From the NCBI RefSeq assembly GCF_947568905.1, contig NC_079164.1:3472001-3536000 (forward strand): a DNA stretch of 64,000 nucleotides. The letters run 5' to 3'. The notes beneath the pieces were generated by a model. That model made no database searches, was not told the DNA's origin, and saw only the letters and a list, made by a program, of their open reading frames with translations. Positions 11,960 through 35,799 of this stretch are shown piece after piece (positions within the stretch are counted from its first letter, which is position 1; every line of letters starts with the position of its first letter). Source of the stretch: Ostrea edulis. Taxonomy: Eukaryota. The translations under genes and the position numbers were made by a program.

Positions 11960-12675
11960 ATGCATTTATTACTTAACATCGATGTCAGTAATTGCTGCTC
12001 AGAATTTATTGAACATAACAGTATACAATACTTCATAGTGATTTTTGTAATCTTGATGTTGCCAGAATTGCTTTTACCTCTATAATTGGTATATGTAATT
12101 TAATTTCAGCAAGGCTGAGGAATATATATCATGAGACAACTTGCTATAGTACACTGTATTCCAATAAATATATACCTCTGTAATTTTCGTAATTATAATG
12201 GTCATTGCTTATCAACATAAAATTCAAATTTGCCTCAATGTAATCTACTCATAAATAAAAACTTTTTATTTCTTCAAATATTTATTTTATATCACATGAA
12301 TAAGTTGTACACATGTAAATGTATGTGCACTGAAAACGTGTACTGCTATACAATCATAAGTTTATAATTGTACTGATAACAAATTGACAATACTCATTGA
12401 AGACATCATAGAGACATCTCTATAAAACACTCTGTAAAAATGACATATTAAATGTATTTTTTTTTAAACCCAGGTACTTTAGAATTTCACATGTATATAT
12501 TCAATGTTTTTATAACAGCTATAATGTACAAGGTCTGAAAAATGTCAAGTAAAAGCTGTGAGAGGAGTTGATTGCACAAAGTAGATACCTATTACAGGGA
12601 AGCCCACCCGCCATTCACCATACTATAAGACAGATGCACGTGTGCAACTCGGTCAAACATTAAACAGTATTATTG

Positions 12676-12716
12676 GAGTTGTGAGATTGATCACTGTTCG
12701 TTATCTTCACCTTTCA
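12676..12716 (+). mobile_element. Short terminal stub of the Penelope-like repeat
   Basis: ggagttgtgagattgatcactgttcgttatcttcacctttca matches the ends of the 34262-34777 and 46231-47127 copies. Confidence 0.5.
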
Positions 12717-12751
12717 TTAATAAGATTCCTAGTGCACGTAATCACATTTAA

Positions 12752-15700
12752 CTAGAATAGAGGTCCTCTGAAATTTGTTAGTATTGCACAAACAGTCCAT
12801 ATCTGATTAATGGATGAAGCTAAATTAAGAGGAATGACACCATCAAATATATGATATTCTTTTATCCGCCTTATAGCTCTTTCAACATGAATACGAAGGC
12901 GTGCTATTTCATGCGTAAGTGCTACCTCCAAAGCAGAAAATTTACCCTTTTCACCAAGAAAAGGAGGTATTACCAAAGAAGCTTGTTTTTTCTCTAATAA
13001 GTCCTCAATCAAAAACCCTTTATCAGCCATGACTTGGTCATTAGACTCCAACAAATCCAAAATTCCTGACAATGCAGTAATAGCTTTATCACTAATGTTA
13101 CCTGTGTACATTGAACTAATAAATGCAACAGCACCACAAGGTGTAATCCCAATTAAGCTTTTAAATGTTGTGTGACTTTTATAATTCGAGTACATTTCAG
13201 AATTTAATACTTTTGAGCTAGGAGTTTGAACTTTAATTTCTGTACAGTCCAAAATCACTCTAACATGAGGATAAGTTTCTTGAAAACATTTTGGCATGTT
13301 ACTGTCAACCACACAACGAGGTGGCCATAAAGGTAAACTACCAAGCATTGTATACAAATAATTTGCCCATGTTATTAAAATTCTACTCACTGAAGACTGA
13401 GATATGTTAAATCTAACAGCCAAGTCCTGTTCTGGAAAACCCTGACGAACTCTACATAGGAACATAAAAAACTGATCAATTAGTGGCAATGCTTCATTAC
13501 GGATAGCATTTAACTTCATGTTTTCCACATTTGAGGAATGTCTCTGCATTTGCGTCCACCTGATCATTGTTTCTGCTGTTGGCTGAAGAGCAATAAACAA
13601 ACATTTTAAGGTTTCATAATTTTTAAAACCAGTGTAAAAGTTAATCAACTGGGGATCTGTGGTGAATCGTTCTACAGAAAAAAGTCTCCTTTCTACTGCT
13701 ACAAGCTTTTCCTGTAAATCCTTAATTTCCTCTTGGGCTGCCTGAAGTTGGTCCTTGGTTGTAGTATGGACACTGTAATCATGGTCATTTGAGACAGGTG
13801 GTGTTAATCCAGTCTGATCCACAAAACAAGACGATAATTCTGGCTCTTCCTCAATACTGCAATTGTTATCCTCTGCAGATCGTACTGGTGACCTAAATGT
13901 AAATGTTGAAAATTCATTTTTTTTTAAATGCCAAAGAGCATCAGAAACAATTAGTCCCGACCAAACAGTGAGGGATGAGGACTCCTCATTAACAAGTACA
14001 AAAAAAATGTCAAAAAGCAGAACATTGATACAAAGATCTAAAAATGTATTTTTCTTTGATATCGCATACGTAAATATATGGAGGGGGTGTTGGTGTTAAT
14101 GCCAACCTTTATTTTTTTATTTGAAATTGCCACCTTATGGATTTCAGACTGAGGGGTGGGGTTAGAGTATTTTTTTTTAAGTAAAAATTTATAGTAGAAA
14201 TTTCAATAAACAGTGAATTCATTATCAAAAAGATTAAGCTTGTTAAACTGAATAAAATATATTAAAAGCCATTTTGTTAATATTTTTAAGCGGGTATTAT
14301 TTCAGTGAAGCAAAAGGTAATTCCAAACAAAAAAGGCCTTTATTTTGGCCCAGTTTTAATTCAATTCAAGCTTCAATTGTATAACTTTGTGAGGTTGTCT
14401 AAAAACCCCTCAATGGGGCCCTCTACTGATGAGTAAACAATTTATAAACAGTTTTAAGTCAATTTAAAAGTTTTTCACTGATCTTATATACATCTAAACA
14501 TTTGTTAACTTACATGTTTTTCAATGATCTTCTAAGTGGCCTGATCCGTTTAACTGGTGAATTCCAAGCAAATATGCTTGGTACACTCCCTGGTTTTAAA
14601 GACCGTATTCCATTCAATGACCGCCGTACTTCAGTTGGAAGAAAGTGGGCTGAACAAACCCTTGTTGCATCTGATATCTAAGGAAAGAACAATATACATA
14701 GTAGCACTAGAACCTGTAAATTATATGCTGTCGAGTATTGACCAATTTTGTGTTTTAAATTTGGTCATTTAAGATATTATCTAAATCAAAATTGCAATAA
14801 ACATAAATCTTTTTATTCCATATAATCACACCTTATTTGGAGGTGCTCGTAAACATTTTTGGGGTGCTTGTAACAACATGGGCACTTTTGGGGGCATGGG
14901 TGACAAATTATTGGTGCTCAATACTTGGAGTGAAATGTTTTCTGGGCGAAGTCACAGAAATATTGATGTTAGATTTTTGAAAATTGGTCAATTTTGGGCA
15001 GTTTTTGTCCCGCACCAAAGGCTCCGGGGCTGCTGGAGTCCTGAAATTCACAGTTTATGTCCCCCTTGTCCCAAAAATGATTCAATATATGCCAAATCTG
15101 AAAAGAATTGGACTAGTAGTTATCGAGAAGTTAAAAATGTTCAACTGTTACCGCACGACGACGGACGACAACCAATATGCAATAGGTCACTTGAGTAATC
15201 TCAGGTGACCTAATATATATATATATATATATAATGAAATTGTTATAAAAGACCAAGTACCTTCAAACTGGTTCAATTACTAAGTGTTAAACATATCAAA
15301 GAATTGATTAATTTAGGTAAATACTTGTAATTAGCATGTTTAAAAAGAGATGCTTAATATAGCTTTTGTTCTATTTATGTATACTCTCCTGTGTGATGTT
15401 TGTTTATAAATATCATATTTATGTTATTCTGTTTTTGAATCTGGTGAGTCATATAACTCATGGATAATAAAGAACTATCATGCATGTACCTGGACAGAGT
15501 TGCTGGACATTAAATAAACAGTGATTTAAATTAGGAATTGGGTGACAGGTGCTGCAATGTACAGAGCAGGAGATTTACCTTCATTCATTCATTAATTTTA
15601 TTCGCTCAAACCACAATGAAAATGATACATTTATTTAGGTACAATACAGAATTTTCATGAATCAATACATGTAACGTCAGAGGAATATATATACATGTAG

Positions 15701-17080: not shown

Positions 17081-17761
17081 TATAGGTTGAATTTTTATGT
17101 GTATATAAATCCATCTTAGAATTAGACAATCAGGCGGAGGTCTGACCCTACCAAGTAAAAATGGAAAGAGCGTGGAAGCTTCTCTCCCAGAAGGTATATA
17201 TACATTAAAAGATGCTCATAACCACCCTGCACCAATAAATATTGACCTAATTATTTTTCTATGACTATGAAGTCATGAATAGTGAGGACACCAAATGTGA
17301 AGGCTACATAAGAAGAGTAGGCCCCTATTTGAAAAGTCATATTGTGCATGCGAAATATATATGTATATTCAATGCACATTATATTTGTTGTTGACATTTA
17401 ATTTCCAGGTCATGAAGTTCTATGATAAGTTCCCAAAGAGTAAAGTCGTATGCATGGGAATTATCAATTGTGATGTCGCGGTCCGGAATTTTACCGCTCC
17501 GGTTTGTGTTCTAGTGTTTTAGTGTATACTTCCGTGACGCCGTAGCATGCTTTATGTCTCTGTAAATTGTGGGTATTTGGGCCTCCCTAAGGAGTAAGTT
17601 TGCTTAAATACCTTTGTAAACAATAACTTTACAATGTTATGGATGTTTTTCTATAGGTATGATTATGTGTAATCGTTTTCTGAATCTTCGTGGTTTATTT
17701 TCAATAATGTGACCTATTTTCACTCGAAATGTTTGTCATACGTTTACCATACGTTTGTAAT

Positions 17762-19874
17762 GGGTGGGTGTAAATGTAGTCCGGGACATATGTCCCGCGA
17801 TGTCCGATATTGATGTTTGCCGATTTATCGTTACACGTTAGTTTTTCTTCAATTATCTTACTCAATGTGTTTTAAGACGATCACCAAGAGTCTTCATTGT
17901 GAAGTTGGTGTATGGAAATTGCCTAATTATTTAATAAATGGCTTTTATTTTTTCTTCAGGGTGTAAAGGTAGTCCCGAAGATTTTACGAAGAAAATGCAG
18001 TTCCGGTTTTTGTTTTTGCCTCGTTTAAGTACAAAGCACTTATAATCTTTAAGTATTGTGTCCAATTGATAATCATAATAGACTATTTTATTTGGTTATT
18101 TGAAATAATCTCACTAATCAATACATTAAACGGGTTTTTATATCCTTTTTTTCTCGGGACATCGCAGTTAAATGAGATACTAATGCGAGAATCGGACTGA
18201 TATGAAAACATTAAATCCGAATTCATCTAAAGACTAATTTATTATTATTATTATTACTATCCAAAAGCAATGTTAGACGTTTAAATTAAATGTAATTTGT
18301 AATTCATATACAATATCGTGGAAAGATTAATAAAATTTATATTGGGGTTGTTAGCCGTAAGTTAATTAAACATGTAAAGTATGCCCAGCTCTTGCCATGT
18401 GGAGGCCACCCCTCTAAAGAGTCATAGTTTTATTAATTTGATATTTTGCTAAATCTGCACCGAATCATATATTTACTTTTTTTCTGATACTTTATTTTTA
18501 AAATGAAATATATATATTATTTATTTGATATTTTGCTAAATCTGCACCGAATCATATATTTACTTTTTTCTGATACTTTATTTTCAAAATGAAATATATA
18601 GATTTTTAATTTCGGCAATGTAATTAAAGAGTTTTCTTATGTTTATAAACAAACCAGTGAGATGTTAATTTTGTAATTTAAAGCATCTTAAAATTTGAAA
18701 AAGCAAGAAAATTTTGATCAATAAAGGTGGGGAAAAATTAGTATTTTAGAATGAAATTATTTATGTTCTGCCTGTTTTAATTTAAAATTTCTTTAGCACT
18801 ATTATACACACTAAAAATAAATACTACAGTAGGTCTACTGCTAATGCTACATGTATAAGCACTAAGAACAACATCTGCAACACCATGAGAAGCTTTGTGA
18901 ATAATCGCCTTGAAAGTTCACGCAACGATTGTGTTACAACTTTTCACAGATGTCGCATGATGTCATATTGTCAAAGATGTCAGGTAGATTGCAATCAAGT
19001 CCTATAAAATCCAGACCCCCTGCCTCATAAAGTGCCCCCCCCCCCCCCCCCCCCCCCCCGTAACCACAATTCCTGGATCCGTCCCTGTTCATTACAAAAT
19101 GCAACACCTACATTAACTGTAAATATTCCATAGAGAGGGTAGTTTATATATATTTACATGTATTTCTATTCAGGTATAAAATATCACAGAATGTCATGAT
19201 TGTAAATTTGAAATAACAAATTGAAACCCGGCATAATCTATAGCACTATTCAGTTATAACAGTTAAAAAATAAGTGACTGTATGAATAACACAACAAAAT
19301 ATATTGATACCAAATCTTATTATTTATAGTCCTTTATATCAGTTGTAATTAATTTTCCTTACTAGATATATAACACTTCAAATCACTTGTATAGCTATTC
19401 ATAATACGGGTTGAAACTGTCACCTTATTCCGGTTTTAATTTTACACTCTTCGTGTCGAGTCAACCACTGAAGCGATGTCCCATAAAAAAAAGGACGAGC
19501 ATTCACATAACATGCTGAATATTTCGTAAATCTTTTTATCATGATATCAAACAATATCTAAACAAGAGCAAAAGCAACATAAAACACAGAAAAGGTTTTA
19601 CTTCAATTATTAACAAGGCAAAAACCAAAACCGGAAATGCGTTTTCTTCGTAAAATCTTCGGGACTACCTTTACACCTTGAAGAAAAAATAAAAGCCATT
19701 TATTAAATAATTAGGCAATTTCCACACACCAAATTCACAATGAAGACTCGTGGTGATCGTCTTAAAACACATTCAGTAAGATAATTGAAGAAAAATTAAC
19801 GTATAACGATAAATCGGCAACATCAATATCGGACATCCCGGGACATATGTCCCGGACTACATTTACACCCACCC
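17762..19874. mobile_element. Non-autonomous Mutator-like element (MULE)
   Basis: TIRs of about 265 bp (17762-18025 / 19612-19874) starting gggtgggtgtaaatgtagtccgggacatatg. 9-bp TSD gtttgtaat at 17753-17761 and 19875-19883. No coding interior seen. Confidence 0.9.
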
Positions 19875-20606
19875 GTTTGTAATACGTATAGAGCCATGAC
19901 TGGTTAAATAGTTTTTTATTGTGTTCACGTTTTCGCCAACATTTTGATGAAGTTGATCAGTGTTTTATGATTGTTTCTTATTTGTTTTATAGTTTTTTAC
20001 CCTCGTCTCATGAGGAAAGTCCCGAATAAAGAATATATATATGGAGTTCCAGTCGACTCGTTCTAGTTTATTCTTTAAGAACGGCACATCAATAACACCT
20101 TTCAGATTGTAGGTAAGTGAATAAGATACGATTAACAAAATGTGAAGGATAATTAAGTTAGAAGTGATTATTTACGAAGATCTGAAACTTAATTAAATCA
20201 TTTCAGATAATGTTTATTTTATTCCATATTCAGTTAGCTGCATGGACTTGCTCTAACAATAGCTAATTTCACATTCATATTAGAATTAAAAGGAGGAAAG
20301 TTGTGATTTCAAAGTATTAACAGGTGATGCTGATCTTCAAAAATCATATTCGGAGGAAGACTTTCTCGGGCATTATAGAAAGATGCCATACATTAATGAA
20401 GAAGGTATGAATCTTAAAGATATGAAACAATTGTATCAATGGACAACTTCAACATCAATTCATTACTTTAAATATGTTTAAATACTGTTTCCATTACCGT
20501 CATATCTGTAGCATTAGAGGGAGTTTATTATTCGTATTTACCAACATGTGTCAACAATTTAACATATGAGAGTACCCACAAAAATTAATGCAAAACTGGA
20601 GACAAT

Positions 20607-22312
20607 ACACATGGTCTTCTGTTGATAACACTCTAGCATGAGACCACAGTCCTATAACACCCACAAACACACATGGTCTCATGTTGACAACACTCTAGCA
20701 TGAGACCACAGTCCTATAACAGCCACAAACACACATGGTCTCATATTGACAACACTCTAGCATGAGACCAGTCCTATAACAGCCACAAACACACATGGTC
20801 TCATGTTGACAACACTCTAGCATGAGACCACAGTCCTATAACACCCACAAACACACATGGTCTCATGTTGACAACACTGTACCATGAGACCACAGTCCTT
20901 TAGCAACTAAAAACACACATGGTCTCATGTTTACAACACTATCATGAGACCACAGTCCTATAACACCCACAAACACACATGGTCTCATGTTGACAACACT
21001 CTAGCATAAGACCAATCCTATAACAGCCACAAACACACATGGTCTCATGTTGACAACACTCTAGCATGAGACCACAGTCCTATAACACCCACAAACACAC
21101 ATGGTCTCATGTTTACAACACTCTAGCATGAGACCACAGTCCTATAACAGCCACAAACACACATGGTCTCATGTTGACAACACTCTAGCATCAGACCACA
21201 GTCCTATAACAGCCACAAACACACATGGTCTCATGTTGACAACACTCTAGCATCAGACCACAGTCCTATAACAGCCACAAACACACATGGTCTCATGTTG
21301 ACAACACTCTATAATGAGACCACAGTCCTATAACAGCCACAAACACACATGGTCTCATGTTGACAACACTGTACCATGAGACCACAGTCCTTTAGCAACT
21401 AAAAACACACATGGTCTCATAGTTTAAAAACACTGTATCATGAGACCACAGTCCTATAACAGCCACAAACACACATGGTCTCATGTTGACAACACTCTAG
21501 CATGAGACCACAGTCCTATAACACCCACAAACACACATGGTCTCATGTTGACAACACTCTAGCATGAGACCACAGTCCTATAACAGCCACAAACACACAT
21601 GGTCTCATGTTGACAACACTCTAGCATAAGACCACAGTCCTATAACAGCCACAAACACACATGGTCTCATGTTGACAACACTCTATAATGAGACCACAGT
21701 CCTATAACAGCCACAAACACACATGGTCTCATGTTGACAACACTGTACCATGAGACCACAGTCCTTTAGCAACTAAAAATACACATGGTCTCATAGTTTA
21801 AAAACACTGTATCATGAGACCACAGTCCTATAACAGCCACAAACACACATGGTCTCATGTTGACAACACTCTAGCATGAGACCACAGTCCTATAACAGCC
21901 ACAAACACACATGGTCTCATGTTGACAACACTCTAGCATGAGACCACAGTCCTATAACAGCCACAAACACACATGGTCTCATGTTGACAACACTCTAGCA
22001 TAAGACCACAGTCCTATAACAGCCACAAACACACATGGTCTCATGTTGACAACACTCTAGCATAAGACCACAGTCCTATAACAGCCACAAACACACATGG
22101 TCTCATGTTGACAACACTCTATAATGAGACCACAGTCCTATAACAGCCACAAACACACATGGTCTCATGTTGACAACACTGTACCATGAGACCACAGTCC
22201 TTTAGCAACTAAAAACACACATGGTCTCATGTTGACAACACTGTACCATGAGACCACAGTCCTTTAGCAACTAAAAACACACATGGTCTCATGTTGAAAA
22301 CACTGTACCATA
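20607..22312. repeat. 62-bp tandem satellite, about 27 copies, each with an internal hairpin
   Basis: Unit acacatggtctcatgttgacaacactctagcatgagaccacagtcctataacagccacaaac; tggtctcatg / catgagacca form a 10-bp inverted repeat. Confidence 0.97.
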
Positions 22313-22419
22313 AGAGTGTATAAGGGATTGCATTTTCCAAATCAATAATCTCTGTTTTGCATATTAACAATATTATCCAGTGTATCTACCTTATTGCATG
22401 TGTACTTAAATTTCTTTTT

Positions 22420-23450
22420 CATGGAGACTTGTGGGTTCAAATCCCACCACTACTGACATTTAGTAGTCAAAAGTAGTGTAAATTTGGTAGGTCACCATGA
22501 TCTAATACCTATTACCTATATTATCATAGCATGTATACTTGTCTTTTTACCCAATGTGTGTTTGATTTATTCTGTGGATGCTGCCCAAATTTCAAAAAAC
22601 TCCTAGTATACAATATACTGTTTGGATGTTGGTTTTCATCCTGGAAGTTTGAAAAGATAATAATATGTAAATATCGCATGTATTTGAGGGTAACATTGAA
22701 AATTTTCACCCCGAGAAAACCATTGTCAACCGAGGAGGTTGACAATGGTTTCTCGAGGGGAGAAAATTTCAATGTTTCCCTCAAATACATGCAATATTTG
22801 TTTTATTATACTGAATGTTATGTAAACTGGAAAGCAGAAAAACTTACGTCTGTTGACATTTGATCAATCACTGTCGTGCGATATTTCGTATTTCGATGCA
22901 GGTACTCGCGTTTATTACAAACGCTCAAACGACGTCGTCTAGCAATCTACGGCAAACCGTACGTGCATAAATTTGACACATGTGATAATTTTTTATAATA
23001 TCGCCCGTTGTCAAGTACTGTTACCCGTTGCTAGATACTATCACCCTGGGTCGCGTGTTTTCTGTTCTCAGAGGGTAACAATATGTTTTTTCAAATGCTT
23101 CTCGACCAATCAGGTTCGAGTATTTTACATGAAAGTATAATAAATGGTTTTCTCAACCTGCTATTCTGTGTTTTTGCATATTACCAATACTCTATCTAGC
23201 ATGTCTTCAATATTACTAAAATGTCTTTTTCATGGAGACTTGTGGGTTCAAATCCCACCACTACTGATCTTTAGTAGTTGAAAGTAGTGCAAATTTGGTA
23301 GGTCACCATGATCTAATACCTATACTATCCAGCATGTTTACTTTAATGCATGTATCTAACATTTCTATTTCATGGAGACTTGTGGGTTCAAATCCCACCA
23401 CTACTGACGTTTAGTAGTCAAAAGTAGTGCAAATTTGGTAGGTCACCATG
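22420..23450 (+). repeat. Three copies of an 80-nt unit containing a tRNA T-arm/B-box
   Basis: Copies at 22420-22499, 23231-23310 and 23371-23450: catggagacttgtgggttcaaatcccaccactact...agtagt...gtcaccatg. Confidence 0.8.
22657..23144. mobile_element. Non-autonomous element with a long one-ended hairpin (Crypton-like, tentative)
   Basis: Imperfect hairpin 22676-22792 with arms of about 56 bp; ataataa at both ends; ccaatcag near the right end. The family label is from memory only. Confidence 0.45.
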
Positions 23451-23782
23451 ATCTAATACCTACACTATCCTTGCATGCATACTTGTCTTTCTACCTCTTA
23501 TGATTGCCCAAACCTTGCTTTGGTACATACGCTATACAGCCAGTATTTCTTTGGATGTTGTCCATTTTACGAAACCCCTATACATGTATTGTTATTCTTC
23601 ATAAGTTGCATTTGCATGTCTATTATTCATACAAATTTGTTATCACCTTTATGATTGTTGACAACACTGTAGCATGAGACCACACGTGTAAGCATAGTTT
23701 TGGTTACAATTATAGTTACTGTTGAAATACATCATTTTTTTCTGTAATTCCTCATACATAACATAAATTCTATCATTGTTAG

Positions 23783-26700
23783 AAGAGGAAGCCTTTGATC
23801 AATGCCCGATGCATTCAACAGTGGGCGAGTTGTTGACGAAAAACGTTATCGATATGGATGTCCATGAAATGAGGGCTATTTTGTCTCAAGCCTGTGGACC
23901 CAAAGATGTGACATCATGTATGTATGCAAATTGTTGAATTTGTGTGTCTTTAAGGTAAAAGCAATACATGTACTAACCGTCAATTTGCCCGATAAAATAA
24001 TTGTTGCAAAATAATGATTTACTTTTTCAATGATAGAAAAGAATAAGGTTTAAAAGTTTTTGTTATTTATATTTGTGTAAGAAAACGTAGCAGCTCAGGA
24101 GGTTGGTTTGTGTGTTTATTTTTTTCCACATTTGACTAGAATCTTGATTAGTTTAAGACTTTTAATCCTATCGAAGCCCCTCTTACCATTGTTGTTAGTG
24201 GGCGAATTTAAGACAGGGTGAATATGAATTCATTAATTTTTTTGAATAGTAATAACCAAGTATTGAGAAAATTTGAATTTGGACAAAATTATTGTCCAGT
24301 GGGAATGGGCATATATGATGCAAAAATAGCCCTGTAGTATATACAGTAATAAACTAGAACTTACATGCATTTAGATGACTTTAAACCTTTTCATTACAGC
24401 AAAAACCCAAAGAAAGAATTGGTATTCCGACCTGTCAAATGCACCACTGTGGTGGACAGGGACCGGTCTTCCTTGGCTGTCCCTTAACCATCCTAGAAGT
24501 TTGTTTAATTCAATTTATATTTTTTATGCCTCCATGACACAAAGGTGACTGATAAGGCCTTTGGATATCTCTTGTTTAGTATATAAAGTAGTTATGAAAC
24601 AAATTTCAGGAGAACAAAAAAGGTTCAATCGGCAACAGTTATCCCAACTGGTAACGTCACTGCAGGAGTATGCAGACGTTTTAGTGCAACCTCCCCACAA
24701 GAAGATCAAACTCATCAGATCTTGTCAAAAACCTGGTAAGTAAAGTTAATGTTGTGAAGTAAATCAATAACAAAGATATTCAACTGTTGGGTCCTTAAGC
24801 TGACAGAGCATATTACAAAATGATTTTCCTCTTTGATTTAAAAGCGATCCCAGATGAAGATCCGGTGGAACCTGGTAAGTATATGTAATGTTGTGAAGTA
24901 AATCAATAACAAAGAAATTCAACTGTTGGGTCCTAAAGCTGACAGAGCATATTACAATATGATTTTCCTCTCTGATTTAAAAGCGATCCCAGATGAAGAT
25001 CCAGTGGAACCTGGTAAGTAAAGTTAATGTTGTGAAGTAAATCAATAACAAAAAATTGACTTTATTGGATATGTAAATGGCAGAACATATTAAACAGTGA
25101 TTTATCCAGGGAATATCCGTTAGTGATAGCTACTGTATTCAATGTGCATCTTTATGGAAAATAGAACTTACTAATCATATTACAAAATATTAAATGAACA
25201 CAATATTTTAGACTCTGTGTCTGCCCCACAGTAAGTGCATTGTTTAAGTATGTTATTCTGTTTTTGATTTTGATTTTTTCTTCTTTTCTCACGGTGGAAT
25301 CATAATTTCATTCCAGGTGAATGGAATTTTAGCATGTTTTTATGTTCTCATTTATGGAAAGCAGTGCCTAAAGACATGCTATTTTATCATTATTTAGGTC
25401 AGAAATATTTTTTAATGCATATCTAATGGGGGGATGTACCAAGAAATTGACCAAGAAATAACCACCTTAAATTGTGATTCCACAATATTTTATTTCGTAA
25501 ATTGAATTTTCTGTTACTGTTAAAAGTTATACATTTGATGATGCTCACATGCAATACTTTGTCTTTTCAGTATAAGCTTTATCAAAATTACCTGATATTG
25601 CTCATAAAAGGAAATTTGATTACATGTAAATACAGGTCAATCATACATGTAATACCTTCTCTTTTTTTTGAAAAAGTTTTGCAGCAAAAATTTGAATGAA
25701 ATCATTTATATGAATAAGGAATACAGGTAAAAATATGACGGAGTTCTGTCAATCAATATGTTCTTACATGTACGTTTATGTTACTTAGATCTGAAAATCC
25801 TGCTCCAGAGACCATCGGCCGTTTTCTTCAATGCAAGTATCTCTCTATCTCAACTATATGTGTGGGTGTGTTGTGGGCGTAGAGATGTCGAAATTGTCAT
25901 ACAGAATATAGATTGCTTATTACATATCTTCAAATACAATGACGGAATAGCAATTGATAGTTGTATTTAATTTCCTTTATATACATAGTTTTTTGTTGTG
26001 TGAATTTTCAGACCTTAGGAGTTTGTGGACAAAACGTGCAATTCCTTCTAAGGAGAATTTTTTGATTGCTTCATGCGAAGGAGTAAGGTTAAGTGCAGAG
26101 GCATTCCTGTCCTTAAGAGACAGAGTTTCGGATGAGGTATGACCGATGTTCTAACAAATTTGGTTTATGTTGAATGTATTGAAAGTATCAGTATGGGAAA
26201 TACATGTACATTCCATCTTGTTTTTTATTTCCTTTTTTTTTTTTGAGAAACAGCATGATTAATATTGATATTTTCCAATTTAATGTTTCAGTTACTTGAT
26301 GCATACATGTACTGTTGTTTGAGAGCAAAGAAGGTAAGAAAGAAATTTTATGTAATTCAATTGTTTAATGTTTTAAGCTTTTAAAGCACATTTTTATGCT
26401 TTTAAAACACACATTATACTGAAGTTTATCCAATAGTGGAGTGGTATTAGAAATTACACTATGAAATAAGATAATTGTATCCAAGTATTACAAATTATTG
26501 CTGATTAATATTTGCAACAAAATGCTAGGAACAATTCTTTTCAGTTAATTGTACATATTTTATACCATATGGTATGTATATGTGTACTGGTATTGTGAAG
26601 TTTCTGTAGATTTTATAGGTGAATTTTACTTTCTATTTAAGTCGAGTTATGAGTACATAAATTGTACAGTGCTCAGCATGTTACTGAGCAAAAGAAATCA

Positions 26701-29611
26701 GGAGGCTATTGTTGATGTAAGTCTGTCAAGTTATTGATTCATCTAATAGTATAAAGAAGAGCTTTAGTACACAAAATAACAATACCACAATTATTTATAC
26801 AGTTAAAAATGCATGGTGTTCAATATAATTGAAAGTTTGTAGAATATCCAATTGTAAAAATGACATCCCGGCACTCTCCAAAATCTGTTTGAAGAACATG
26901 TATATTGCATATAATGGTACTTTGATAACTTTATAACAGAAATAAGTGTTTTCATGAAAGGCTTGTCAATGATTATTGTGGAAATAACAGATTATTAAAA
27001 CACTTAATTACTAGTAACAAGTAAAGTTCAATATATGGAATATTTTTCAGTACGAAATATCATCACCACTGTTAATGGGATTTTATAACATTGGCAGAAG
27101 GCATTGGGTTTTGATTGTGAGTGTGAATATTAAGTTCATATATTTTTTTTACATATATAAGCAATGTCATGCATACAATGGCATTTTCACTGAAATAATC
27201 AGTTAAAGTATTATAGATGTTTTTAGATCACCTGAGCTGAGAGCTCAAGTGAGCTTTTCTGATCATTGTCCGTCATCTTTCTGCCTGTCTGTAAACTTTC
27301 ACCTTGACCAAAAAAATCCTTTTGCACAATTGCAAGAATAGGATGTGGTCATTTAAAAATCTTCTTATCAACAGCCAATGGACAAGACTTTGTAAAACAC
27401 GGGAATAGGTTGGGGGCCACATTAGGGATAAATGTTTTAAATACAAATACATATGGAAAATCTTCAAATATGGGCCAAGTTGACCCTGGTGAGTGATGTG
27501 GCCCATGGGCCTCTTGTTAAAATCTCCATGAATAACATTCCTTGTTGACTCTTTGTGTTTTGATTTCCTGCATAAAATGTTTCTGTTTATTATTTGCAGA
27601 TGATTTCTTGTATTGAAAAAAGACTGACAGTCCTTGATCCACTGGGAGAGAGTAAAATGACTATGCAATGCATATTATCAACTTGGAAGTGAGACATTTC
27701 ATATATTGATGAAGCAGTTTTACATTTTTTTCATGATGAAGATCACATGTAAAAAAAAAAATGGATGAAATTTTCACATGTATAGATTTCTATATTTGTT
27801 TTTGTGTAGAAATTTCCTGAGAATAAGCAAGAAGAATACTAGCCTGAGTTGTGGTAATTGGTATGTGAACACAATTCCACATACCAAACAACAAGATAGT
27901 AGTTCTTGTGGAATATTTTGTCTTATGGTAATTTAAATTGAAATATAAGTTATATAATACAATATATAAATATAATTGATATAATATATCTATTGTTCAG
28001 AATTATATTGGTAAATGACAAAAAATAGCTTCTATCTGTTAGGCATTGAAAATTTCAGTACATTAAATTTGTATGGATTCTTAAACGAAGTAGTACTACT
28101 TGTGTGTACATACCTCTCAGTATATAAGACTTAACATAATTGAAAAGATATCAGTGTCAAGAGTGCAATTAGTTGGGAAATTCGGTTATTTGTGGGGTTT
28201 TCATCAATCATTTTAAAAGTTTGTTGTTTTTTACTTTAGTTTGTAGAAAAGCTGTTGGAGGAAGAGGCTCTTTTTTTCAATACCTGCAGCGATGCCATAA
28301 CTGCCTTCAGAGTGAAAGTTGCTTCGAGAATAATTGAAAATCAAGGTTTGTATATACATGTACATTTACAAGTTTGTCATTGTTTGACAGGATAGCGCAT
28401 ATTTTTAGCCGAGTTGCAACGAAGTTGAACTCGGCTATTGGTTTGGTGATGCGGGCGGGTGTCAACAATTGGTTTCTGGATGATAACTCGAAAAGTTTAC
28501 AATCTAATCAAATGAAACTTTGATATATTGTTGGGTACCAGGTAAGGAAGACCCCTTAAGATTTTGGAGAAAATAGATCAAAGGTCAAGGTCACAGTGAC
28601 CGAATATAGAATGAAATTTCAGAAATATTTGGTTTCTGGATGATAACTCAGAAAGTTTAAATCCGAATCAAATGATACTTGGATATATTGTTGGATACCA
28701 GCAAAGCAAGGCCCCTGTTGATTTTGGAGAACAAAGGTAAAAGTCACAGTGACCGAATATAGATTGAAAACTTCAGACAAATATGGTTTCTGGACAGTAA
28801 CTCGAAAAGTTTAAAAATGAAATTAGATGTATCCCATGCAACTCGGCTCATGCACCCCTGGGTGCATATACTGATTTTGCTTTGTATATTGGTTGTCAGT
28901 TTGGAGTTGTACTTTTAAATTTCAACATTTGAGGATAGTGTAAGATAAATGTTTTAATTTCATGTTTGCATTATTATTTTTTTTGTCATATCATAGGAAT
29001 TTTATGCATGGGGACCCCATACTTGTGAAGCATAGTTACAGCTGGGTTTTTTTTTTTTTTTTTTTTTGTAGTGAATGGTTTGTTAGTTTCCCCTCCATTC
29101 TCATACTGCCTGCAGCATTTTACTGAATTTCCCAAGAAGTCTTTGAAAGGGACTGATTCACGATTTTCCCCAAACTTTTGTTATGTTGTCATGTAAACAA
29201 TTCAAATTTTCTTTTTTGGTGATAGGCTGTTAACTTGCATTGTATATTTGTATATTTATTTCTTATTTTACTGACAGATGATGAAACTTTACATAGCCTA
29301 TGCAGAATCTGCCAAAAAACTGATAGCATGAAAGGGAAACTAAGATACATTGACTGGGTACTGTTCTTCATCTGATTTGATGTAATTTAAATTGAACAGA
29401 AAAGAAGGATCCAATTAGAACAATATACCAATATACAATGAATTTGATTGGCAATAATACATATCAATTTATGTTTGTTTGTGTGTGTGTTTTAATTCTT
29501 AATCTATCATTATTTTTCCAGGTTGGTTGTGATGACTGTGGACTGTTTTGGTGCCATTTTAGTTGTATGAAGATGTCATCATCATATCATGACTTTATTC
29601 AACAGAAATGA
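23783..29611 (+). CDS. Spliced Ulp1/SENP-like (peptidase C48) protease + PHD finger gene, 5'-incomplete, stop codon inside the last PHD exon
   Basis: Phase-consistent GT-AG exons: 23783-23917, 24400-24498, 24580-24735, 24845-24874, 24984-25013, 26012-26136, 26292-26333, 26642-26716, 27051-27116, 27600-27688, 27810-27927, 28240-28345, 29278-29357, 29522-29611 (about 413 aa). Motifs LSLRDRVSDE|LLDAYM, RRHWVLI, VLDPLG, QQDSSSCGIFC; PHD CRIC...W|VGCDDC...CHFSC. Confidence 0.8.
24736..25050 (+). repeat. 139-bp tandem intron+micro-exon duplication (2 copies plus a partial third)
   Basis: gtaagt...aaaag|cgatcccagatgaagatcc(g/a)gtggaacctg|gtaagt at 24736-24874 and 24875-25013. Confidence 0.9.
27221..27518 (-). 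mobile_element. HINE in the intron between the catalytic His and Asp exons
   Basis: Reverse complement of the 1577-2026 family ends: ttttagatcacctgagctgagagctcaagtgagctttt...gtggcccatgggcctcttgtt. Confidence 0.75.
28401..28880 (-). mobile_element. Helentron-like element with internal repeats of about 155-160 bp
   Basis: Terminal hairpins agccgagtt...aactcggct and atgcacccctgggtgcat; ggtttctgga recurs near 28471, 28631 and 28785. Confidence 0.6.
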
Positions 29612-32115
29612 TCATGTTGTGTATGCTCCAGCTTATTGTTTTTGTACTTTCCGTTCTTTGGGGAGCAGTTGAAGTTAGCTCTTCCAACTTTTGAGCACTA
29701 CTACACAGGATGCTATAACTGTGTATGTACTGATACTGGTTCAATAGTTCATTCATTTGTCCATATACATGAATTGTACATTTATTACTTAAATCTATGT
29801 AGTTGAAAAAGTTTATGTCAATTCAAATTTTAAAAGGGTTTTGAAAACAATAACTAATTCCTGAATTTGGTTGATGTATTTTTTTCTTGATTCTTAAAAA
29901 TGTTCATATCATTTTCCCCAACACTTTCGTTGGACAATTTTATATATTGTCTAATAATTCGCAATTTTAACCCAAAAAAAACACTTCTTTAAGTAATTCC
30001 TATTTTTAATTTCAAGACAAGACTTTGTAAGTACAGTTTTAAAAACTGACAACACTCCTAGTATTTCTTTTTCATCTCAACCTCTATCTATGTATATAAA
30101 TGAATGTTTCCTGAATTTAAGTGCAATATATGTATGAATATTGATTTGTATTACTAACACCAACAAACAAAACTATTTTTGATGTGAATACAGCAAAACG
30201 AAGTTTATGATATACACACTTATTTAAGTACTGGCCTGGATTTCTCGAGAAAAACTTAAATCGAAACTTGGACCTATGTATGAGATTTTACTAAAATTTT
30301 GGCTGCTCAAATAACAGAAAACTCCAACTCAATTTGGAGATTTTTTGGAGAAATCCAAGTCGTATTATTGTATCCTGTTTCGCGTAAATTGCATTTGATT
30401 TCAATGTAACTTTTTTGTTTTAAGTTGTTTTGCACATATATGTTTTGACAATTGATATTGCAAAGATTCTCTCCTAAAGATTCTCTCCCAACCCACATTA
30501 CCGTTTATTTCTTTTATTGCTGTAAATAACTACATTATTAATAGTTTTAACATGATGAAGGAATCCACGTTATTGCTATCTATCATCTTGTATATTGTTC
30601 TAAAGATAACTTCTCGAATATATTCATACCTTTGTATGAAGTATACTGAGGAGTTCTGTCTGTGAAAATTATTGAACTGTTCAAATGCGGGAGATATGAA
30701 AAGATAACCATTGTACATACAACATGTAATATGTGTTTTGAGGATTTTTAGTTACAGTTGTTTGTAATGTTCAATTCTAACACTGTTGTTTAATTATGTA
30801 AGAACAAGATTCAACGTTATTTCAGTGTAGAATTCTGTGTTGAGAATTTCTGTCAAGTGTACAGATTTCAGTGTTTTTCTGCGTATTTCTGTTTTGCTCG
30901 CGTGAAGTATTTAATTCTCTATTTTTTGGTGTAAATTTATTATTGTTATGGCAAAATAGGACTTATTTCTCTATATTCCAATTTAGTCTGCTATATATTT
31001 ACAATCTTCAGAATGCATTATAGATTTGTTGCTTAGAGTATAGTAATGCAATAGATTCAAAATTTAAATCATGATTTAGATTCAAGTAATAGGATTGCTT
31101 TCTTTATTTGAGATTGAGGTTTGATAATTGAGACTACCAAGAGTGATTGTCCTATGCAAAATCTACTTTATTTTAAATTCTATTTGTAGCACATATTTAC
31201 ATGTAAGTAAGCCATTGAGAGTGAATACCTCTGATATGAGTATCTTGTTTATTAATTTGTCCTCATTAAGAGGAATTTCGACATAGATATATCAAAAAGT
31301 ATTATTGGCAAAAACCATCTGTTTTCAAATTTGTCAATTATTAAGTGTTCATAATGTACACGAACTTTGTAATTTAGGGAAATATTTATGTTTTGCACTT
31401 AAGTTGCGAGAAAACCTTGTTTAAGTCATTCTCCGTTGCTTGCTTGAATTAGTACACTGCCATACAGTGTCATTTTCATGGACATGTATTTATGAAATTG
31501 ATGTGATAAGACATGTCTTAAGCAATAAAGAATATATAATCTGACGTTGCCTTGAGTTATTCCCCTTCAATGCGTTTTGTGTAAATATCTACTCTATATT
31601 TGGGGCTTTATGAAATTCCCAAGTTTCCCCAACAATAATTTAAGATAAGCATAACATGTATACAGTGCTCCCTTGATTTATTGCCCCAGTTACAATGCCA
31701 ACCCTGCTTATTGCCTGAAAATCATAAAGAACAGATTTCTCCCCATGTTACACCCCATTGTAATGCTAATACCACATGGTCAAATTTTATAGGGGTTACC
31801 CTTGATAATAATAACAATTATCTAACAACCAACAGTAATCATTCCTCTATTTTGGGACCAGTGCAGTGAATTGAGGTTGGCTGAAAAAGGTATGCAGGTG
31901 TACAAATAATTGTTGAAATGAACTCAAATTGATTTTGACATTGAATAACTCCGTTTACATAATCAAGATATAGTTGTTTAAACATTTAGGATGATATTGC
32001 TATTAATTTATTTCTGATCCAAAAAATAAATCTTACTACAGATCTAAGTGTGTTGTTCATTACTTTTTCAACAAATGTATATTTATATCAGCAGTGCAGA
32101 GTAGAGAACGTTTAA

Positions 32116-32632
32116 ATATGGTCAGTACTCAGTAGACGGTTCTTCGATATGGCCAGTACTGAGTTGACAAGGTTCTTAGATATGGTCAGTTCCGAGTTGA
32201 CAAGGTTCTTAGATATGGTCAGTACTCAGTAGACAAGGTTCTTAGATATGGTCAGTACTCAGTAGACAATATTCTTAGATATGGTCAGTACCAAGTTGAC
32301 AAGGTTCCTAGATATGGCCAGAACTGAGTTGACAAGGTTCTTAGATATGCCCAGTACTCATTTGACAAGGTTCTTAGATATGGTCAGTACTCAGTTGATA
32401 AGGTTCTTAGATAAGGTCAGTACTCGGTAGACAATATTCTTAGATATGGTCAGTACCAAGTTGACAAGGTTCTTAGATATGGTCAGTTCCGAGTTGACAA
32501 GGTTCTTAGATATGGTCAGTACTCGGTAGACAATATTCTTAGATATGGTCAGTACCGAGTTGACAAGGTTCTTAGATATGGTCAGTACCGAGTTGACAAG
32601 GTTCTTAGATATGGTCAGTACCGAATTGACAA
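32116..32632 (+). repeat. 33-bp minisatellite, about 15 copies
   Basis: Unit gagttgacaaggttcttagatatggtcagtacc. Confidence 0.95.
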
Positions 32633-32748
32633 CGGAAACATTTATGTGTAACACGACATGGGATGAGATCAAGGATGCTAGCAATTGACATTTGACAATA
32701 TTTCAAATTCTAGTGACTGATCACCTTCCTTTTTCTGAATATGTCTAT

Positions 32749-34127: not shown

Positions 34128-34261
34128 NNNNNNNNNNNNNNNNNNNNNNNNNNNNNNNNNNNNNNNNNNNNNNNNNNNNNNNNNNNNNNNNNNNNNNNNN
34201 NNNNNNNNNNNNNNNNNNNNNNNNNNNNNNNNNNNNNNNNNNNNNNNNNNNNNNNNNNNNN
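34128..34261. other. Assembly gap
   Basis: Run of N. Confidence 1.
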
Positions 34262-34777
34262 GACAAACGGGATGATTTCAGCTTCTCCATCGTCAACTTC
34301 CCATATTTATGTAGCAATATTCCATTATCACCTGCATATAGTGTTTATACCTCTCAACTGATTCGATATGGAAGAGCATGTTCTGCGTATGGTCAGTTTT
34401 TAAATCTCGACAGGCTACAGACAAACAAGTTGATGGTGCAGGGGTTTCAACAGTCTCGTTTAAAGTCAGCATTTCGCAAATTATATGGTCGTTATAACGA
34501 TCTAGTTCGCCAATACCACCTATCATTGGGTCAAGCTGTCTGACGTGTTTCATACCGATTGTTAGGCCGTTCCCAGCACACTGATTTTGACTGCGGATAA
34601 TTCCGTTTACCTGATCAGAACACACGGCGGGTGTGACCGGCCGACAGGGGACGCTTACTACTAGGCATCCGATCCCACCTTTGGTATGTCCAGGGGTTCG
34701 TGCTTGCCCAATTCTCTATTTTGTAATGCTTATAGGAGTTATGAGATTAATCACTGTTCGTTATCTTCACCTTTCAT
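34262..34777 (+). mobile_element. Penelope-like retroelement 3' fragment
   Basis: Closely similar to 46646-47127 (gacaaacgggatgatttcag...gttcgttatcttc(a/g)cctttcata). Confidence 0.75.
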
Positions 34778-34780
34778 ATT

Positions 34781-35526
34781 GCACTGGCTATATCTAAGAA
34801 CCTTCTCCACTGCATACTGTCCACATCTAAAACCCTTGTCAACTCAGTACTGGCCATATCTAAGAACCTTGCCAACTCGGTACTGACCATATCTAAGAAC
34901 CTTGTCTACTGAGTACTGGCCATATCTAAGAACCTTGTCAATTCGGTACTGTCTATATCTAAGAACCTTGTCAACTCAGTGCTGGCCATATCTAAGAACC
35001 TTGTCTACTGAGTACTGGCCATATCTAAGAACCTTGTCTACTGAGTACTGGCCATATCTAAAACCCTTGTCAACTCAGTACTGGCCATATCTAAGAACCT
35101 TGCCAACTCGGTACTGACCATATCTAAGAACCTTGTCTACTGAGTACTGGCCATATCTAAGAACCTTGTCAATTCGGTACTGTCTATATCTAAGAACCTT
35201 GTCAACTCAGTGCTGGCCATATCTAAGAACCTTGTCTACTGAGTACTGGCCATATCTAAGAACCTTGTCAATTCGGTACTGTCTATATCTAAGAACCTTG
35301 TCAACTCAGTGCTGGCCATATCTAAGAATCTTGTCTACTGAGTACTGGCCATATCTAAGAACCTTGTCAATTCGGTACTGTCTATATCTAAGAACCTTGT
35401 CAACTCAGTGCTGGCCATATCTAAGAACCTTGTCTACTGAGTACTGGCCATATCTAAGAACCTTGTCAACTCAGTACTGTCTATATCTAAGAACCTTGTC
35501 AACTCAGTGCTGGCCATATCCAAGAA
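34781..35526 (-). repeat. 33-bp minisatellite, about 22 copies, reverse complement of the 32116-32632 array
   Basis: Unit ctg(a/g)ccatatctaagaaccttgtcaactcagta. Confidence 0.95.
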
Positions 35527-35799
35527 ACTTTTTTATTCTGTTCTAGCCAAATTTATAAAACATTTTTCATATACATGCATAATTAACAAAATAATATATA
35601 ATTTACTACTTGAAAATAATCAAGGTTGCAATATTCATGAAAGTGTGAAAAGATCAGTTACATCAAAATTATCAGTATCTTTAATAATCCAAGAGATGAA
35701 AATTAAGGCATGAATACAACTTTGTAATTTACATTTCATTCCATTCTCCAATGGATTTTAAGTCGCTTAAAATAACATTAAACAAAATAGTTACACAAC

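What the first reader, a model, noticed from the sequence alone, without database searches (positions are those of the whole stretch)
23783..29611. Hidden 14-exon SUMO/ubiquitin-like protease + PHD gene invisible to ORF calling
Exons of 30-156 nt chain in frame with canonical splice sites. They assemble a complete C48 triad (His in RRHWVL, Asp in VLDPL, Gln/Cys in QQDSSSCG) followed by a PHD finger. It looks too divergent to be a canonical SENP and sits among transposons. Known: Ulp1-type proteases are carried by some MULE and other DNA transposons. Inference: a chromatin-targeted deSUMOylase, possibly an anti-silencing factor or its domesticated derivative.
Basis: partly seen in the sequence, partly recalled or inferred. 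Interest (0 to 1): 0.75.

Follow-up and report, generated by a model that had tools for sequence, protein, structure and literature searches.

The report
Oyster Ulp1-like protease gene with PHD finger
The stretch holds a real, spliced, expressed flat-oyster gene, already listed in RefSeq as an uncharacterized protein, that joins a divergent SUMO-protease-type domain to a histone-reader-type zinc finger, and in this assembly a stop codon cuts that finger short.

Summary
The exon chain is real. Sixteen GT/GC-AG exons (23783-29611, + strand) give an open 423-codon frame. From 25789 onward its translation equals RefSeq isoform X1 of Ostrea edulis LOC125672780 ('uncharacterized protein', four isoforms). 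So the gene is hidden from ORF callers, not from eukaryotic annotation. Isoform X1 matches Pfam Peptidase_C48 above the curated cut-off (42.9 bits, E 6e-11). It aligns to human SENP2 with His, Asp, oxyanion Gln and Cys in place. Only the catalytic half is recognisable.

The C-terminus resembles Spp1/ING-type PHD fingers. However, the reference TGA (29609-29611) lies on the finger's conserved Trp codon and removes the last zinc pair. A TGG allele appears in a relative's transcript contig and in part of the DNA depth of two runs.

An RNA-like contig set from a relative supports the splice junctions. Most listed coding differences are synonymous. I found no transposase, terminal repeats or extra copies.

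The six upstream exons are not in the RefSeq CDS. They are only partly supported.

The best reading is a stand-alone, lineage-restricted Ulp1-PHD gene. It probably descends from the Ulp1-PHD module of Mutator/Ginger1 transposases. That origin, and any chromatin deSUMOylase or anti-silencing role, is inference. Other notes of this scan report Ulp1-like genes elsewhere in this genome.

The parts
23783..23917 (+). Not in the RefSeq CDS.
   Evidence: Open frame and AG/GT sites. No cover in the RNA-like run X1 (table 2). No Pfam match.
24400..24498 (+). Upstream exon 2.
   Evidence: X1 contig record 1 joins it to exon 3 (table 8).
24610..24735 (+). Upstream exon 3. Its AG acceptor (24608-24609) reads AT in the DNA contigs of X2, X3 and X5.
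   Evidence: table 8 (record 1) and table 3 (24609 G>T at full depth).
24845..25013 (+). Two 30-nt exons (24845-24874 and 24984-25013, each encoding IPDEDPVEP) created by a 139-bp tandem duplication. A one-copy allele exists.
   Evidence: D6, D8. table 5 (joint 24916>25055 in X2 and X3).
25212..25230 (+). Upstream exon 6 (19 nt).
   Evidence: Rests on frame continuity only. The lengths in X1 record 1 are compatible with it.
25778..25832 (+). RefSeq first coding exon (ATG 25778, MLLRSENPAPETIGRFLQ). Donor is GC (GCAAGT).
   Evidence: A 1-nt deletion allele lies at 25819 (table 4).
26012..26136 (+). Exon 8, the start of the C48-like region.
   Evidence: RefSeq X1. An X1 contig ends exactly at 26012. 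Four synonymous differences and a +T allele at 26057.
26292..26333 (+). Exon 9. Isoform X4 starts at its Met, and intron 8 is retained in X1 record 3.
26642..26716 (+). Exon 10 (skipped in isoforms X2 and X3).
27051..27116 (+). Exon 11 with the catalytic His (27102-27104, RRHWVL). Skipped in isoform X3.
27600..27688 (+). Exon 12 with the catalytic Asp (27636-27638, VLDPLG).
27810..27927 (+). Exon 13 with the oxyanion Gln (27889-27891) and catalytic Cys (27907-27909).
   Evidence: Joined directly to exon 14 in X1 record 3. A homologous exon with the same boundaries is on L003.
28240..28345 (+). Exon 14, the end of the C48 domain and the linker.
29278..29357 (+). Exon 15 with the first Cys pair of the PHD-like finger (29301-29303 and 29310-29312).
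29522..29611 (+). Exon 16 with PHD ligands Cys, Cys, His and Cys, then the TGA stop at 29609-29611, which is polymorphic A/G at 29611.
   Evidence: table 3 (29611 A>G).
29612..29632 (+). Sequence just past the stop. It encodes SCCVCSS, the missing last Cys-x2-Cys of the finger, and is read only in the TGG allele.
   Evidence: the full PHD pattern appears only with X at the stop. (alignment to Spp1 and ING4 through K-W-x-C-x-x-C-S).
27083..27679 (.). Very high-copy repeat inside intron 11.
   Evidence: table 2.
28277..29271 (.). Very high-copy repeats inside intron 14, including a MITE-like element with inverted ends at about 28404-28851.

Best explanation
This is Ostrea edulis gene LOC125672780, a single-copy, multi-exon, alternatively spliced, transcribed gene. 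Its longest annotated product (281 aa) is a divergent clan-CE, family-C48 (Ulp1/SENP-type) cysteine isopeptidase domain with His-Asp-Cys and the oxyanion Gln intact. A Spp1/ING-type PHD finger follows it directly. The order Ulp1 then PHD matches the C-terminal module described for Ginger1 and Mutator transposases. No transposase, terminal repeats or extra copies are present here. The gene is therefore most likely a stand-alone descendant of such a module, kept by the host lineage at least for a time (inferred). The assembled allele carries TGA in place of the finger's conserved Trp codon, so its product lacks the last zinc pair. A TGG allele that would complete the finger is also seen. The likely mode of action is inferred, not shown. 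The PHD finger would bind the histone H3 tail and bring the protease to chromatin, where it would remove SUMO or a related modifier. The truncated allele and the isoforms that skip the His exon would separate or abolish these two activities.
For: Gene and splicing: the chain is open for 423 codons. Exons 7-16 equal RefSeq X1. The CDS range 25778-29611 is confirmed on OX387704.1. Contig record 3 of the RNA-like run X1 joins 27926|28239 directly. Its lengths fit exons 9-12 (233 nt) and exon 15 (81 nt). Record 1 joins exons 2 and 3.

C48: Pfam PF02902 scores 42.9 bits against a cut-off of 20.7 (E 6.4e-11). Weaker hits go to clan siblings C5 adenain and YopJ. SENP2 (1tgz) gives E 4.8e-4 with H, D, Q and C aligned.

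PHD: Pfam PHD gives E 4e-4 over profile positions 1-33 of 47. The PDB hits are nearly all PHD fingers, led by Spp1 at E 1e-3 and the ING proteins. The read-through piece aligns through K-W-x-C-x-x-C-S. The full C4HC3 spacing appears only across the stop.

Polymorphic stop: 29611 A>G is in X1 at 17.8 of 17.8, in X2 at 56 of 166 and in X3 at 21 of 46.

Constraint: six of the eight listed substitution codons in the RefSeq CDS are synonymous, not counting the stop codon. A -1 at 25819 and a +T at 26057, of similar depth, restore the frame exactly before a stop would arise. Divergence from X1 is at least twice as high in the retained intron as in the exons.

Not a mobile copy: exon depth equals that of single-copy flanks, there are no flanking inverted repeats and there is no second copy in the window.

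Known architecture: Ulp1, and Ulp1+PHD, at the C-terminus of Ginger1 and Mutator transposases (PMC2836005). C48 in Kaonashi MULEs (PMC4948706).
Against: Only the catalytic half of the C48 profile is matched. The N-terminal half gives nothing. No usable structure was obtained (AlphaFold2 on the single sequence, pLDDT 39.9). The PHD match is below Pfam's cut-off. No homologue links the gene to a transposon protein, because the length limits of the word search hide long fusion proteins. Descent from a transposon therefore rests on architecture alone. Signs of weak constraint are the segregating nonsense allele, isoforms without the His exon (X3) or starting inside the domain (X4), a lost acceptor for upstream exon 3 in three DNA runs, and no annotated orthologue found. 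Run identities are coded, depths come from contigs, and the phase of the two indels was not shown.
Confidence: 0.7

Rival explanations
1. It is a decaying remnant. On this reading, a transposon-derived or duplicated Ulp1-PHD gene is still transcribed but is losing function in O. edulis, and the annotated protein has no role.
For: The reference allele has a nonsense codon on a conserved PHD residue. Frameshifting indels segregate in exons 7 and 8. The acceptor of upstream exon 3 is lost in three DNA runs. Isoforms lack the catalytic His or start inside the domain. Intron 8 is retained in the main RNA contig. No orthologue was found.
Against: The catalytic residues are intact. The listed coding differences are mostly synonymous, and the two indels compensate each other exactly. 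Exons diverge less than the intron. The exon 13 boundaries are conserved in a 46%-identical homologue. The TGA removes only the end of the finger, not the protease.
Confidence: 0.25
2. It is part of an active or recently active DNA transposon, of MULE, Ginger1 or KDZ type. On this reading the Ulp1-PHD protein serves transposition or counters silencing.
For: The domain order is that of Ginger1 and Mutator transposase C-termini. Some C48-MULEs lack clear TIRs. An unchecked note of this scan (s1-311892) reports a MULE with transposase-SWIM-Ulp1-PHD elsewhere in this genome. The neighbourhood is rich in transposons.
Against: No transposase domain lies in any exon or nearby on this strand. No inverted repeats flank the gene. 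Exon depth equals single-copy flanks while true repeats reach 1e5-1e6. There are fifteen introns, two of them with nested high-copy repeats. A relative carries the same spliced gene.
Confidence: 0.05
3. It is an ordinary cellular SENP/Ulp orthologue that has merely diverged fast, with no transposon ancestry.
For: The best solved-structure matches are SENP2, SENP1 and Ulp1. It has a multi-exon host-like structure. Other multi-exon Ulp1-like genes are reported in this genome by other notes (unchecked).
Against: Similarity to SENPs is marginal (E 5e-4) and limited to the catalytic half. To my knowledge canonical SENPs carry no PHD finger. No orthologue was found by word search.
Confidence: 0.1

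Closest known systems
Ulp1(+PHD) C-terminal module of Ginger1 and Mutator-like transposases (e.g. Ginger1-9_HM; Bao, Kapitonov & Jurka 2010, PMC2836005)
   Same: A C48 catalytic domain followed directly by a PHD finger. Found in invertebrate genomes. The function of the module is unknown.
   Different: Here the module stands alone. There is no integrase or MuDR transposase, there are no TIRs, the gene is single-copy, and it has 9-15 introns. Sequence kinship to those modules was not tested.
Kaonashi (KI) ULP-like genes of plant MULEs (Hoen et al. 2006, as described in PMC4948706)
   Same: A C48 domain encoded as a separate gene linked to transposons. Function unknown.
   Different: Those are plant elements that are multi-copy and mobile and sit next to mudrA. 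No PHD fusion is described there.
SENP1/SENP2/Ulp1 deSUMOylases (PDB 1tgz, 2ckg, 1euv)
   Same: His-Asp-Cys triad, oxyanion Gln, the His-Trp motif, and the same order and spacing of catalytic motifs.
   Different: The match is marginal. The N-terminal half of the domain is not recognisable, and by eye the first substrate-tunnel Trp (the WLND motif) seems replaced. A PHD finger is appended and the protein is much shorter.
Spp1/CFP1 and ING family PHD fingers (H3K4me3 readers; PDB 6ugm, 2pnx, 2g6q)
   Same: C4HC3 spacing, the VGCD-C..W.HF.C core and the K-W-x-C-x-x-C end.
   Different: It scores below Pfam's cut-off. In the assembled allele the last zinc pair is cut off by a stop. Histone binding is untested.

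Membership tests
Peptidase C48 (Ulp1/SENP, clan CE) | Match to Pfam PF02902 at or above the gathering score | tested here: met
   Isoform X1 scores 42.9 bits against 20.7, E 6.4e-11, residues 112-223. X3, which lacks the His exon, still scores 26.1 bits.
Peptidase C48 (Ulp1/SENP, clan CE) | Catalytic His, Asp and Cys plus the oxyanion Gln, in that order | tested here: met
   The alignment to SENP2 1tgz puts H117, D134, Q178 and C184 (X1 numbering) on the SENP2 catalytic residues.
Peptidase C48 (Ulp1/SENP, clan CE) | Complete domain, including the N-terminal subdomain (profile positions 1-90) | tested here: inconclusive
   Pfam covers only positions 91-211 of 217. Residues 25-112 alone hit no protease in the PDB. 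Ulp1 1euv aligns over residues 26-190 only at E 1.3.
Peptidase C48 (Ulp1/SENP, clan CE) | SENP-like fold | tested here: inconclusive
   The single-sequence AlphaFold2 model has pLDDT 39.9 and is unusable. No fold search was run.
Peptidase C48 (Ulp1/SENP, clan CE) | Isopeptidase or processing activity on SUMO, NEDD8 or ubiquitin | not testable with these tools
   Needs biochemistry.
PHD finger (C4HC3) | Match to Pfam PF00628 at or above the gathering score | tested here: not met
   20.8 bits against 24, E 4e-4, profile positions 1-33 of 47.
PHD finger (C4HC3) | All eight zinc ligands with canonical spacing | tested here: not met
   The reference allele has six ligands. The pattern is complete only when read across TGA 29609-29611. 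The piece past the stop aligns to the end of the Spp1 and ING4 fingers. A TGG allele is seen in runs X1, X2 and X3.
Transposon-borne Ulp1-PHD (MULE / Ginger1) | Fused to, or next to, a transposase within one element | tested here: not met
   No transposase domain lies in the exons or in nearby ORFs on this strand. The nearest DDE gene is a PIF/Harbinger-type ORF on the other strand, about 10 kb upstream.
Transposon-borne Ulp1-PHD (MULE / Ginger1) | Terminal inverted repeats and multiple copies | tested here: not met
   No flanking inverted repeats. Depth is single-copy in three DNA runs. No second copy in the window.
Transposon-borne Ulp1-PHD (MULE / Ginger1) | Sequence kinship of the Ulp1-PHD module to transposon copies | not tested
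   No transposon protein library or eukaryote genome search was available. The word search cannot see proteins longer than 1.75 times the query.

The most novel reading that the evidence does not exclude
An oyster-lineage gene has been domesticated from the Ulp1-PHD module of a Mutator/Ginger-type transposon and now acts as a histone-tail-guided deSUMOylase. A common natural allele (TGG>TGA on the PHD's conserved Trp) detaches the protease from its chromatin reader. That would be a segregating separation-of-function variant. A second haplotype carrying an exactly compensated pair of frameshifts would show that the open frame is still under selection.
Probability: 0.15. Interest if true: 0.55.

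Novelty: new member of a known kind. Interest (0 to 1): 0.3.

Why it matters
C48 protease domains recur in Mutator, Ginger1 and other DNA transposons, and their role there is still unknown. A stand-alone, expressed, single-copy Ulp1-PHD gene in an oyster would be a simple case for asking what the module does, because it can be studied without the transposase. Natural alleles with and without a complete finger would help. On its own, though, this is an annotated, uncharacterized, lineage-restricted gene of a known domain architecture, and its function is not shown. One practical point follows for annotation: the RefSeq C-terminus reflects a nonsense allele, not the ancestral end of the protein.

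Tried and rejected
(1) Pfam on single exons found no C48 and only weak PHD and Znf_SCAND3 hits, because the pieces are too short.

(2) My first exon 7/8 junction (25836|26019, GT-AG) also keeps the frame. I replaced it with RefSeq's GC-AG junction (25832|26012), which fits the X1 contig that ends at 26012.

(3) I first took P0007 (...QQKWSCCVC...) as a TGG allele. That was wrong. Its contig L002 has TGA, and the gene caller used a code in which TGA = Trp and TAG = Gln. The TGG allele rests alone.

(4) AlphaFold2 on the single sequence gave pLDDT 39.9. I ran no fold search and did not use the second job, because there were no homologues for an alignment.

(5) Word searches with X3 and X1 returned only the gene's own isoforms. 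This is weak evidence of absence, given the length window and the word filter.

Besides the gene itself it found one fragment, P0002.

(7) The metagenome contig scan gave no relative.

(8) Nothing came from the searches for flanking inverted repeats, for a second copy in the window, for tRNA-like sequences or for coding ORFs in the flanks.

(9) Looking up earlier findings of this scan by sequence returned nothing.

(10) The joined 423-aa model has no reference, so I did not give it to any search tool. It was used only inside scripts. Its N-terminal 142 residues were tested only exon by exon and gave no match.

(11) The read-through finger joined to exon 15 was not submitted as typed letters. 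It was checked with a pattern (X at the stop) and with the two pieces separately.

(12) Locus L001 happens to span the masked run 34128-34261. Its letters there were neither read nor used.

Full report
**What is in the sequence**

The window is AT-rich animal DNA. On the + strand between 23783 and 29611 I could chain sixteen short exons of 19-135 nt. All have AG acceptors and GT donors, except one GC donor. Together they give a single open frame of 423 codons ending at TGA 29609-29611. Stop codons make up 6.0% of trinucleotides in the window, so an unselected frame of that length would stay open with a chance of about 4e-12. The six upstream exons alone have a chance of about 1e-4. These figures ignore the freedom to choose splice sites, so independent support was needed.

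**Independent support for the gene model**

Exon-by-exon Pfam scans were too weak to help. I therefore searched the 39-residue exon 13 against the representative protein library. That search returned a 100% match, P0001 = XP_056007382.1, 'uncharacterized protein LOC125672780 isoform X3 [Ostrea edulis]'.

Its cluster and a word search gave three more isoforms:
- X1 (P0008, 281 aa).
- X2 (P0006, 256 aa), which lacks exon 10.
- X4 (P0009, 216 aa), which starts in exon 9.
- X3 itself lacks exons 10 and 11, and so lacks the catalytic His.

The RefSeq CDS lies at window 25778-29611 on OX387704.1. From SENPAPE to the stop, my chain is letter-for-letter isoform X1. RefSeq uses a GC-AG intron (25832|26012) where I had first used a GT-AG pair seven bases away. 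Both keep the frame.

The gene is therefore invisible only to prokaryote-style ORF calling. It is annotated, and Pfam C48 is precomputed for its products.

**Transcript evidence**

One RNA-like public run (X1, 'organism A', about 93-99% identical in exons) carries spliced contigs (table 8).
- Record 3 places 27810-27926 directly next to 28239-28343.
- It has 233 letters between 26330 and 27810, which equals the rest of exon 9 plus exons 10, 11 and 12.
- It has 81 letters where exon 15 (80 nt) belongs.
- It runs through intron 8, as RefSeq X4 implies, and it ends exactly at 26012, the RefSeq acceptor.
- Record 1 joins exons 2 and 3. It then has 74 more letters. These fit one 30-nt exon, the 19-nt exon and 25 nt of exon 7. 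That fit is suggestive, not proof.

Exon 1 has no cover in X1. In all three DNA runs the AG acceptor of exon 3 reads AT (24609 G>T). These are contigs, not reads, and the run identities are coded.

**The protease domain**

Isoform X1 matches Pfam Peptidase_C48 at 42.9 bits (cut-off 20.7, E 6.4e-11). Weaker hits go to the clan-CE siblings adenain C5 and YopJ. Against solved structures the best hit is SENP2 (1tgz, E 4.8e-4), followed by SENP1, chlamydial Dub1, adenain and Ulp1.

The SENP2 alignment puts RRHW, VLDPLG and KQQDSSSCG on the SENP2 catalytic His, Asp, oxyanion Gln and Cys. In the window these are His 27102-27104, Asp 27636-27638, Gln 27889-27891 and Cys 27907-27909.

The domain is divergent. 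Only profile positions 91-211 of 217 are matched, and residues 25-112 alone hit nothing relevant. By eye, LSLRDRVSDELLDAYMYCCL looks like the 'WLNDxxINxY' helix with its Trp replaced. That comparison comes from memory of the motif, not from a test. A single-sequence AlphaFold2 model was useless (pLDDT 39.9), so there is no structural evidence.

**The finger and the stop codon**

The last 60 residues of X1 match Pfam PHD at E 4e-4. The score of 20.8 bits is below the cut-off of 24, and only profile positions 1-33 of 47 are covered. Their PDB hits are nearly all PHD fingers of the H3K4me3-reader type, led by Spp1 (E 1e-3) and ING1-5.

The protein ends after the sixth zinc ligand. Immediately past the TGA the same frame reads SCCVCSS. 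With X at the stop, the sequence fits the full C4HC3 pattern C-x2-C-x15-C-x2-C-x5-H-x2-C-x16-C-x2-C. A database ORF that happens to read this TGA as Trp (P0007) aligns to the Spp1 and ING4 fingers right through K-W-x-C-x-x-C-S. The TGA position falls on ING4's conserved Trp.

I first took P0007 as proof of a TGG allele. That was wrong. Its contig has TGA, and the gene caller used a code with TGA = Trp and TAG = Gln.

The real evidence for TGG is, table 3. Position 29611 is G in the relative's RNA contig (17.8 of 17.8). It is also G in part of the depth of two DNA runs (56 of 166 and 21 of 46, each 31 letters from a contig end, as expected for a SNP bubble). It is A in a fourth run and in L002. 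TGG is therefore probably ancestral. The assembly carries a nonsense allele that truncates the finger but leaves the protease whole.

**Signs of constraint and of decay**

Signs of constraint:
- Six of the eight listed substitution codons in the RefSeq CDS are synonymous (26046, 26085, 26088, 26094, 27867, 29324). The other two are conservative or near the end (29317-29318 and 29597). This count leaves out the stop codon.
- The retained intron 8 differs from X1 at least twice as much as the exons do.
- One DNA haplotype has a 1-nt deletion in exon 7 (25819) and a +T in exon 8 (26057) at similar depth in three runs. Together they recode 20 residues and restore the frame one codon before the shifted frame would hit a stop. 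Their phase was not shown.
- A metagenome scaffold (L003, P0002) carries a 46%-identical copy of exon 13 with the same acceptor and donor positions. More distant relatives with the same gene structure therefore exist.

Signs of decay:
- The segregating nonsense allele.
- The isoforms without His.
- The lost upstream acceptor.
- The failure to find any annotated orthologue. This last point is weak, because the word search sees only proteins of 0.55-1.75 times the query length.

**Is it a transposon gene?**

The neighbourhood is rich in transposons.
- A PIF/Harbinger-type DDE ORF and a YqaJ exonuclease ORF lie at 11-14 kb.
- A Ty3/gypsy pol lies at 39-43 kb.
- Satellites lie on both sides.
- Very high-copy repeats sit inside introns 11 and 14.

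The gene itself has none of the marks of a mobile element.
- There is no transposase domain in any exon or nearby ORF.
- No inverted repeats flank it.
- There is no second copy in the window.
- Exon depth equals that of single-copy flanks, while true repeats reach 1e5-1e6.

The domain order is nonetheless the one described for the C-termini of Ginger1 and Mutator transposases (Ulp1, or Ulp1 plus PHD; PMC2836005). C48 genes also ride in plant Kaonashi MULEs with unknown function (PMC4948706). Unchecked notes of this scan report a MULE with transposase-SWIM-Ulp1-PHD and several multi-exon Ulp1-like genes elsewhere in this genome.

The most economical reading is a stand-alone descendant of such a module. 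That is inference from architecture. I could not test sequence kinship to transposon copies.

**Mechanism, with what is shown and what is not**

Shown:
- A transcribed, spliced gene.
- A C48 catalytic core with all catalytic residues.
- A PHD-type finger of the Spp1/ING kind, complete only in the TGG allele.

Inferred:
- The finger docks on the H3 tail.
- The protease removes SUMO or a related modifier from chromatin proteins.
- The TGA allele and the His-less isoforms uncouple or inactivate these functions.

The substrate (SUMO, NEDD8 or ubiquitin) cannot be read from the sequence. Nothing supports or tests an anti-silencing role.

**Verdict**

The domain interpretation is supported. The functional story is untested. 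This is a new, uncharacterized member of a known kind of protein. The most interesting detail is the nonsense polymorphism on the PHD's conserved Trp, together with the compensated frameshift haplotype.

Noticed in passing
window 20460-22310 and 23656-23691: A 62-bp satellite with a palindromic unit (CATGAGACCA...TGGTCTCATG). One stray unit lies 90 bp before exon 1. The array seems split by about 1.35 kb of inserted short repeats (22346-22551, 23162-23343, 23314-23495) and a 153-bp palindrome (22657-22809).
   Followed up: partly
window 28277-29271 (intron 14), especially 28404-28851: A MITE-like element with inverted ends AGCCGAGTTGCA...TGCAACTCGGCT and internal tandem units of about 155 bp. 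Summed contig depth in the DNA runs is 1e5-1e6, which puts it among the most abundant repeats of this genome.
   Followed up: no
window 27083-27679 (intron 11): A second very high-copy repeat, with depth 1e5-4e5 in the DNA runs.
   Followed up: no
window 24730-25007: A 139-bp tandem duplication that doubles a 30-nt exon (IPDEDPVEP). DNA runs X2 and X3 also hold a one-copy allele (joint 24916>25055).
   Followed up: partly
window 25819 and 26057: A 1-nt deletion in exon 7 and a +T in exon 8, at similar depth in three DNA runs. Together they restore the frame just before a stop and recode 20 residues. Phase was not shown.
   Followed up: partly
window 32039-32731 and 34684-35676: Arrays of a 33-bp tandem repeat in inverted orientation (about 500-nt arms, 85-88% complementary) around about 2.2 kb that includes a masked N run. 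This is possibly one large element with repeat-built ends.
   Followed up: no
window 17759-18025 and 19612-19877: A pair of 267-bp inverted repeats (95% complementary) enclosing about 1.6 kb with no long ORF. This is probably a non-autonomous DNA transposon.
   Followed up: no
L002 (Logan contig, = window 29251-30292), protein P0007: A database 'protein' called across intron 15 and the gene's stop with a code that reads TGA as Trp and TAG as Gln. Entries of this kind can mimic read-through alleles.
   Followed up: yes
L003 444-584 (ENA marine metagenome scaffold): It carries a homologue of exon 13 (46% identity over 48 aa, HTKQQDSTSCGVFCLM) with the same splice acceptor and donor positions. 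It comes from an unidentified eukaryote.
   Followed up: partly
window 10937-13822 and 38971-42723: A YqaJ-type exonuclease ORF lies next to a PIF/Harbinger-type DDE_Tnp_4 ORF on the other strand. An intact-looking 1251-aa Ty3/gypsy pol ORF (protease, RT, RNase H, integrase) lies further on.
   Followed up: partly
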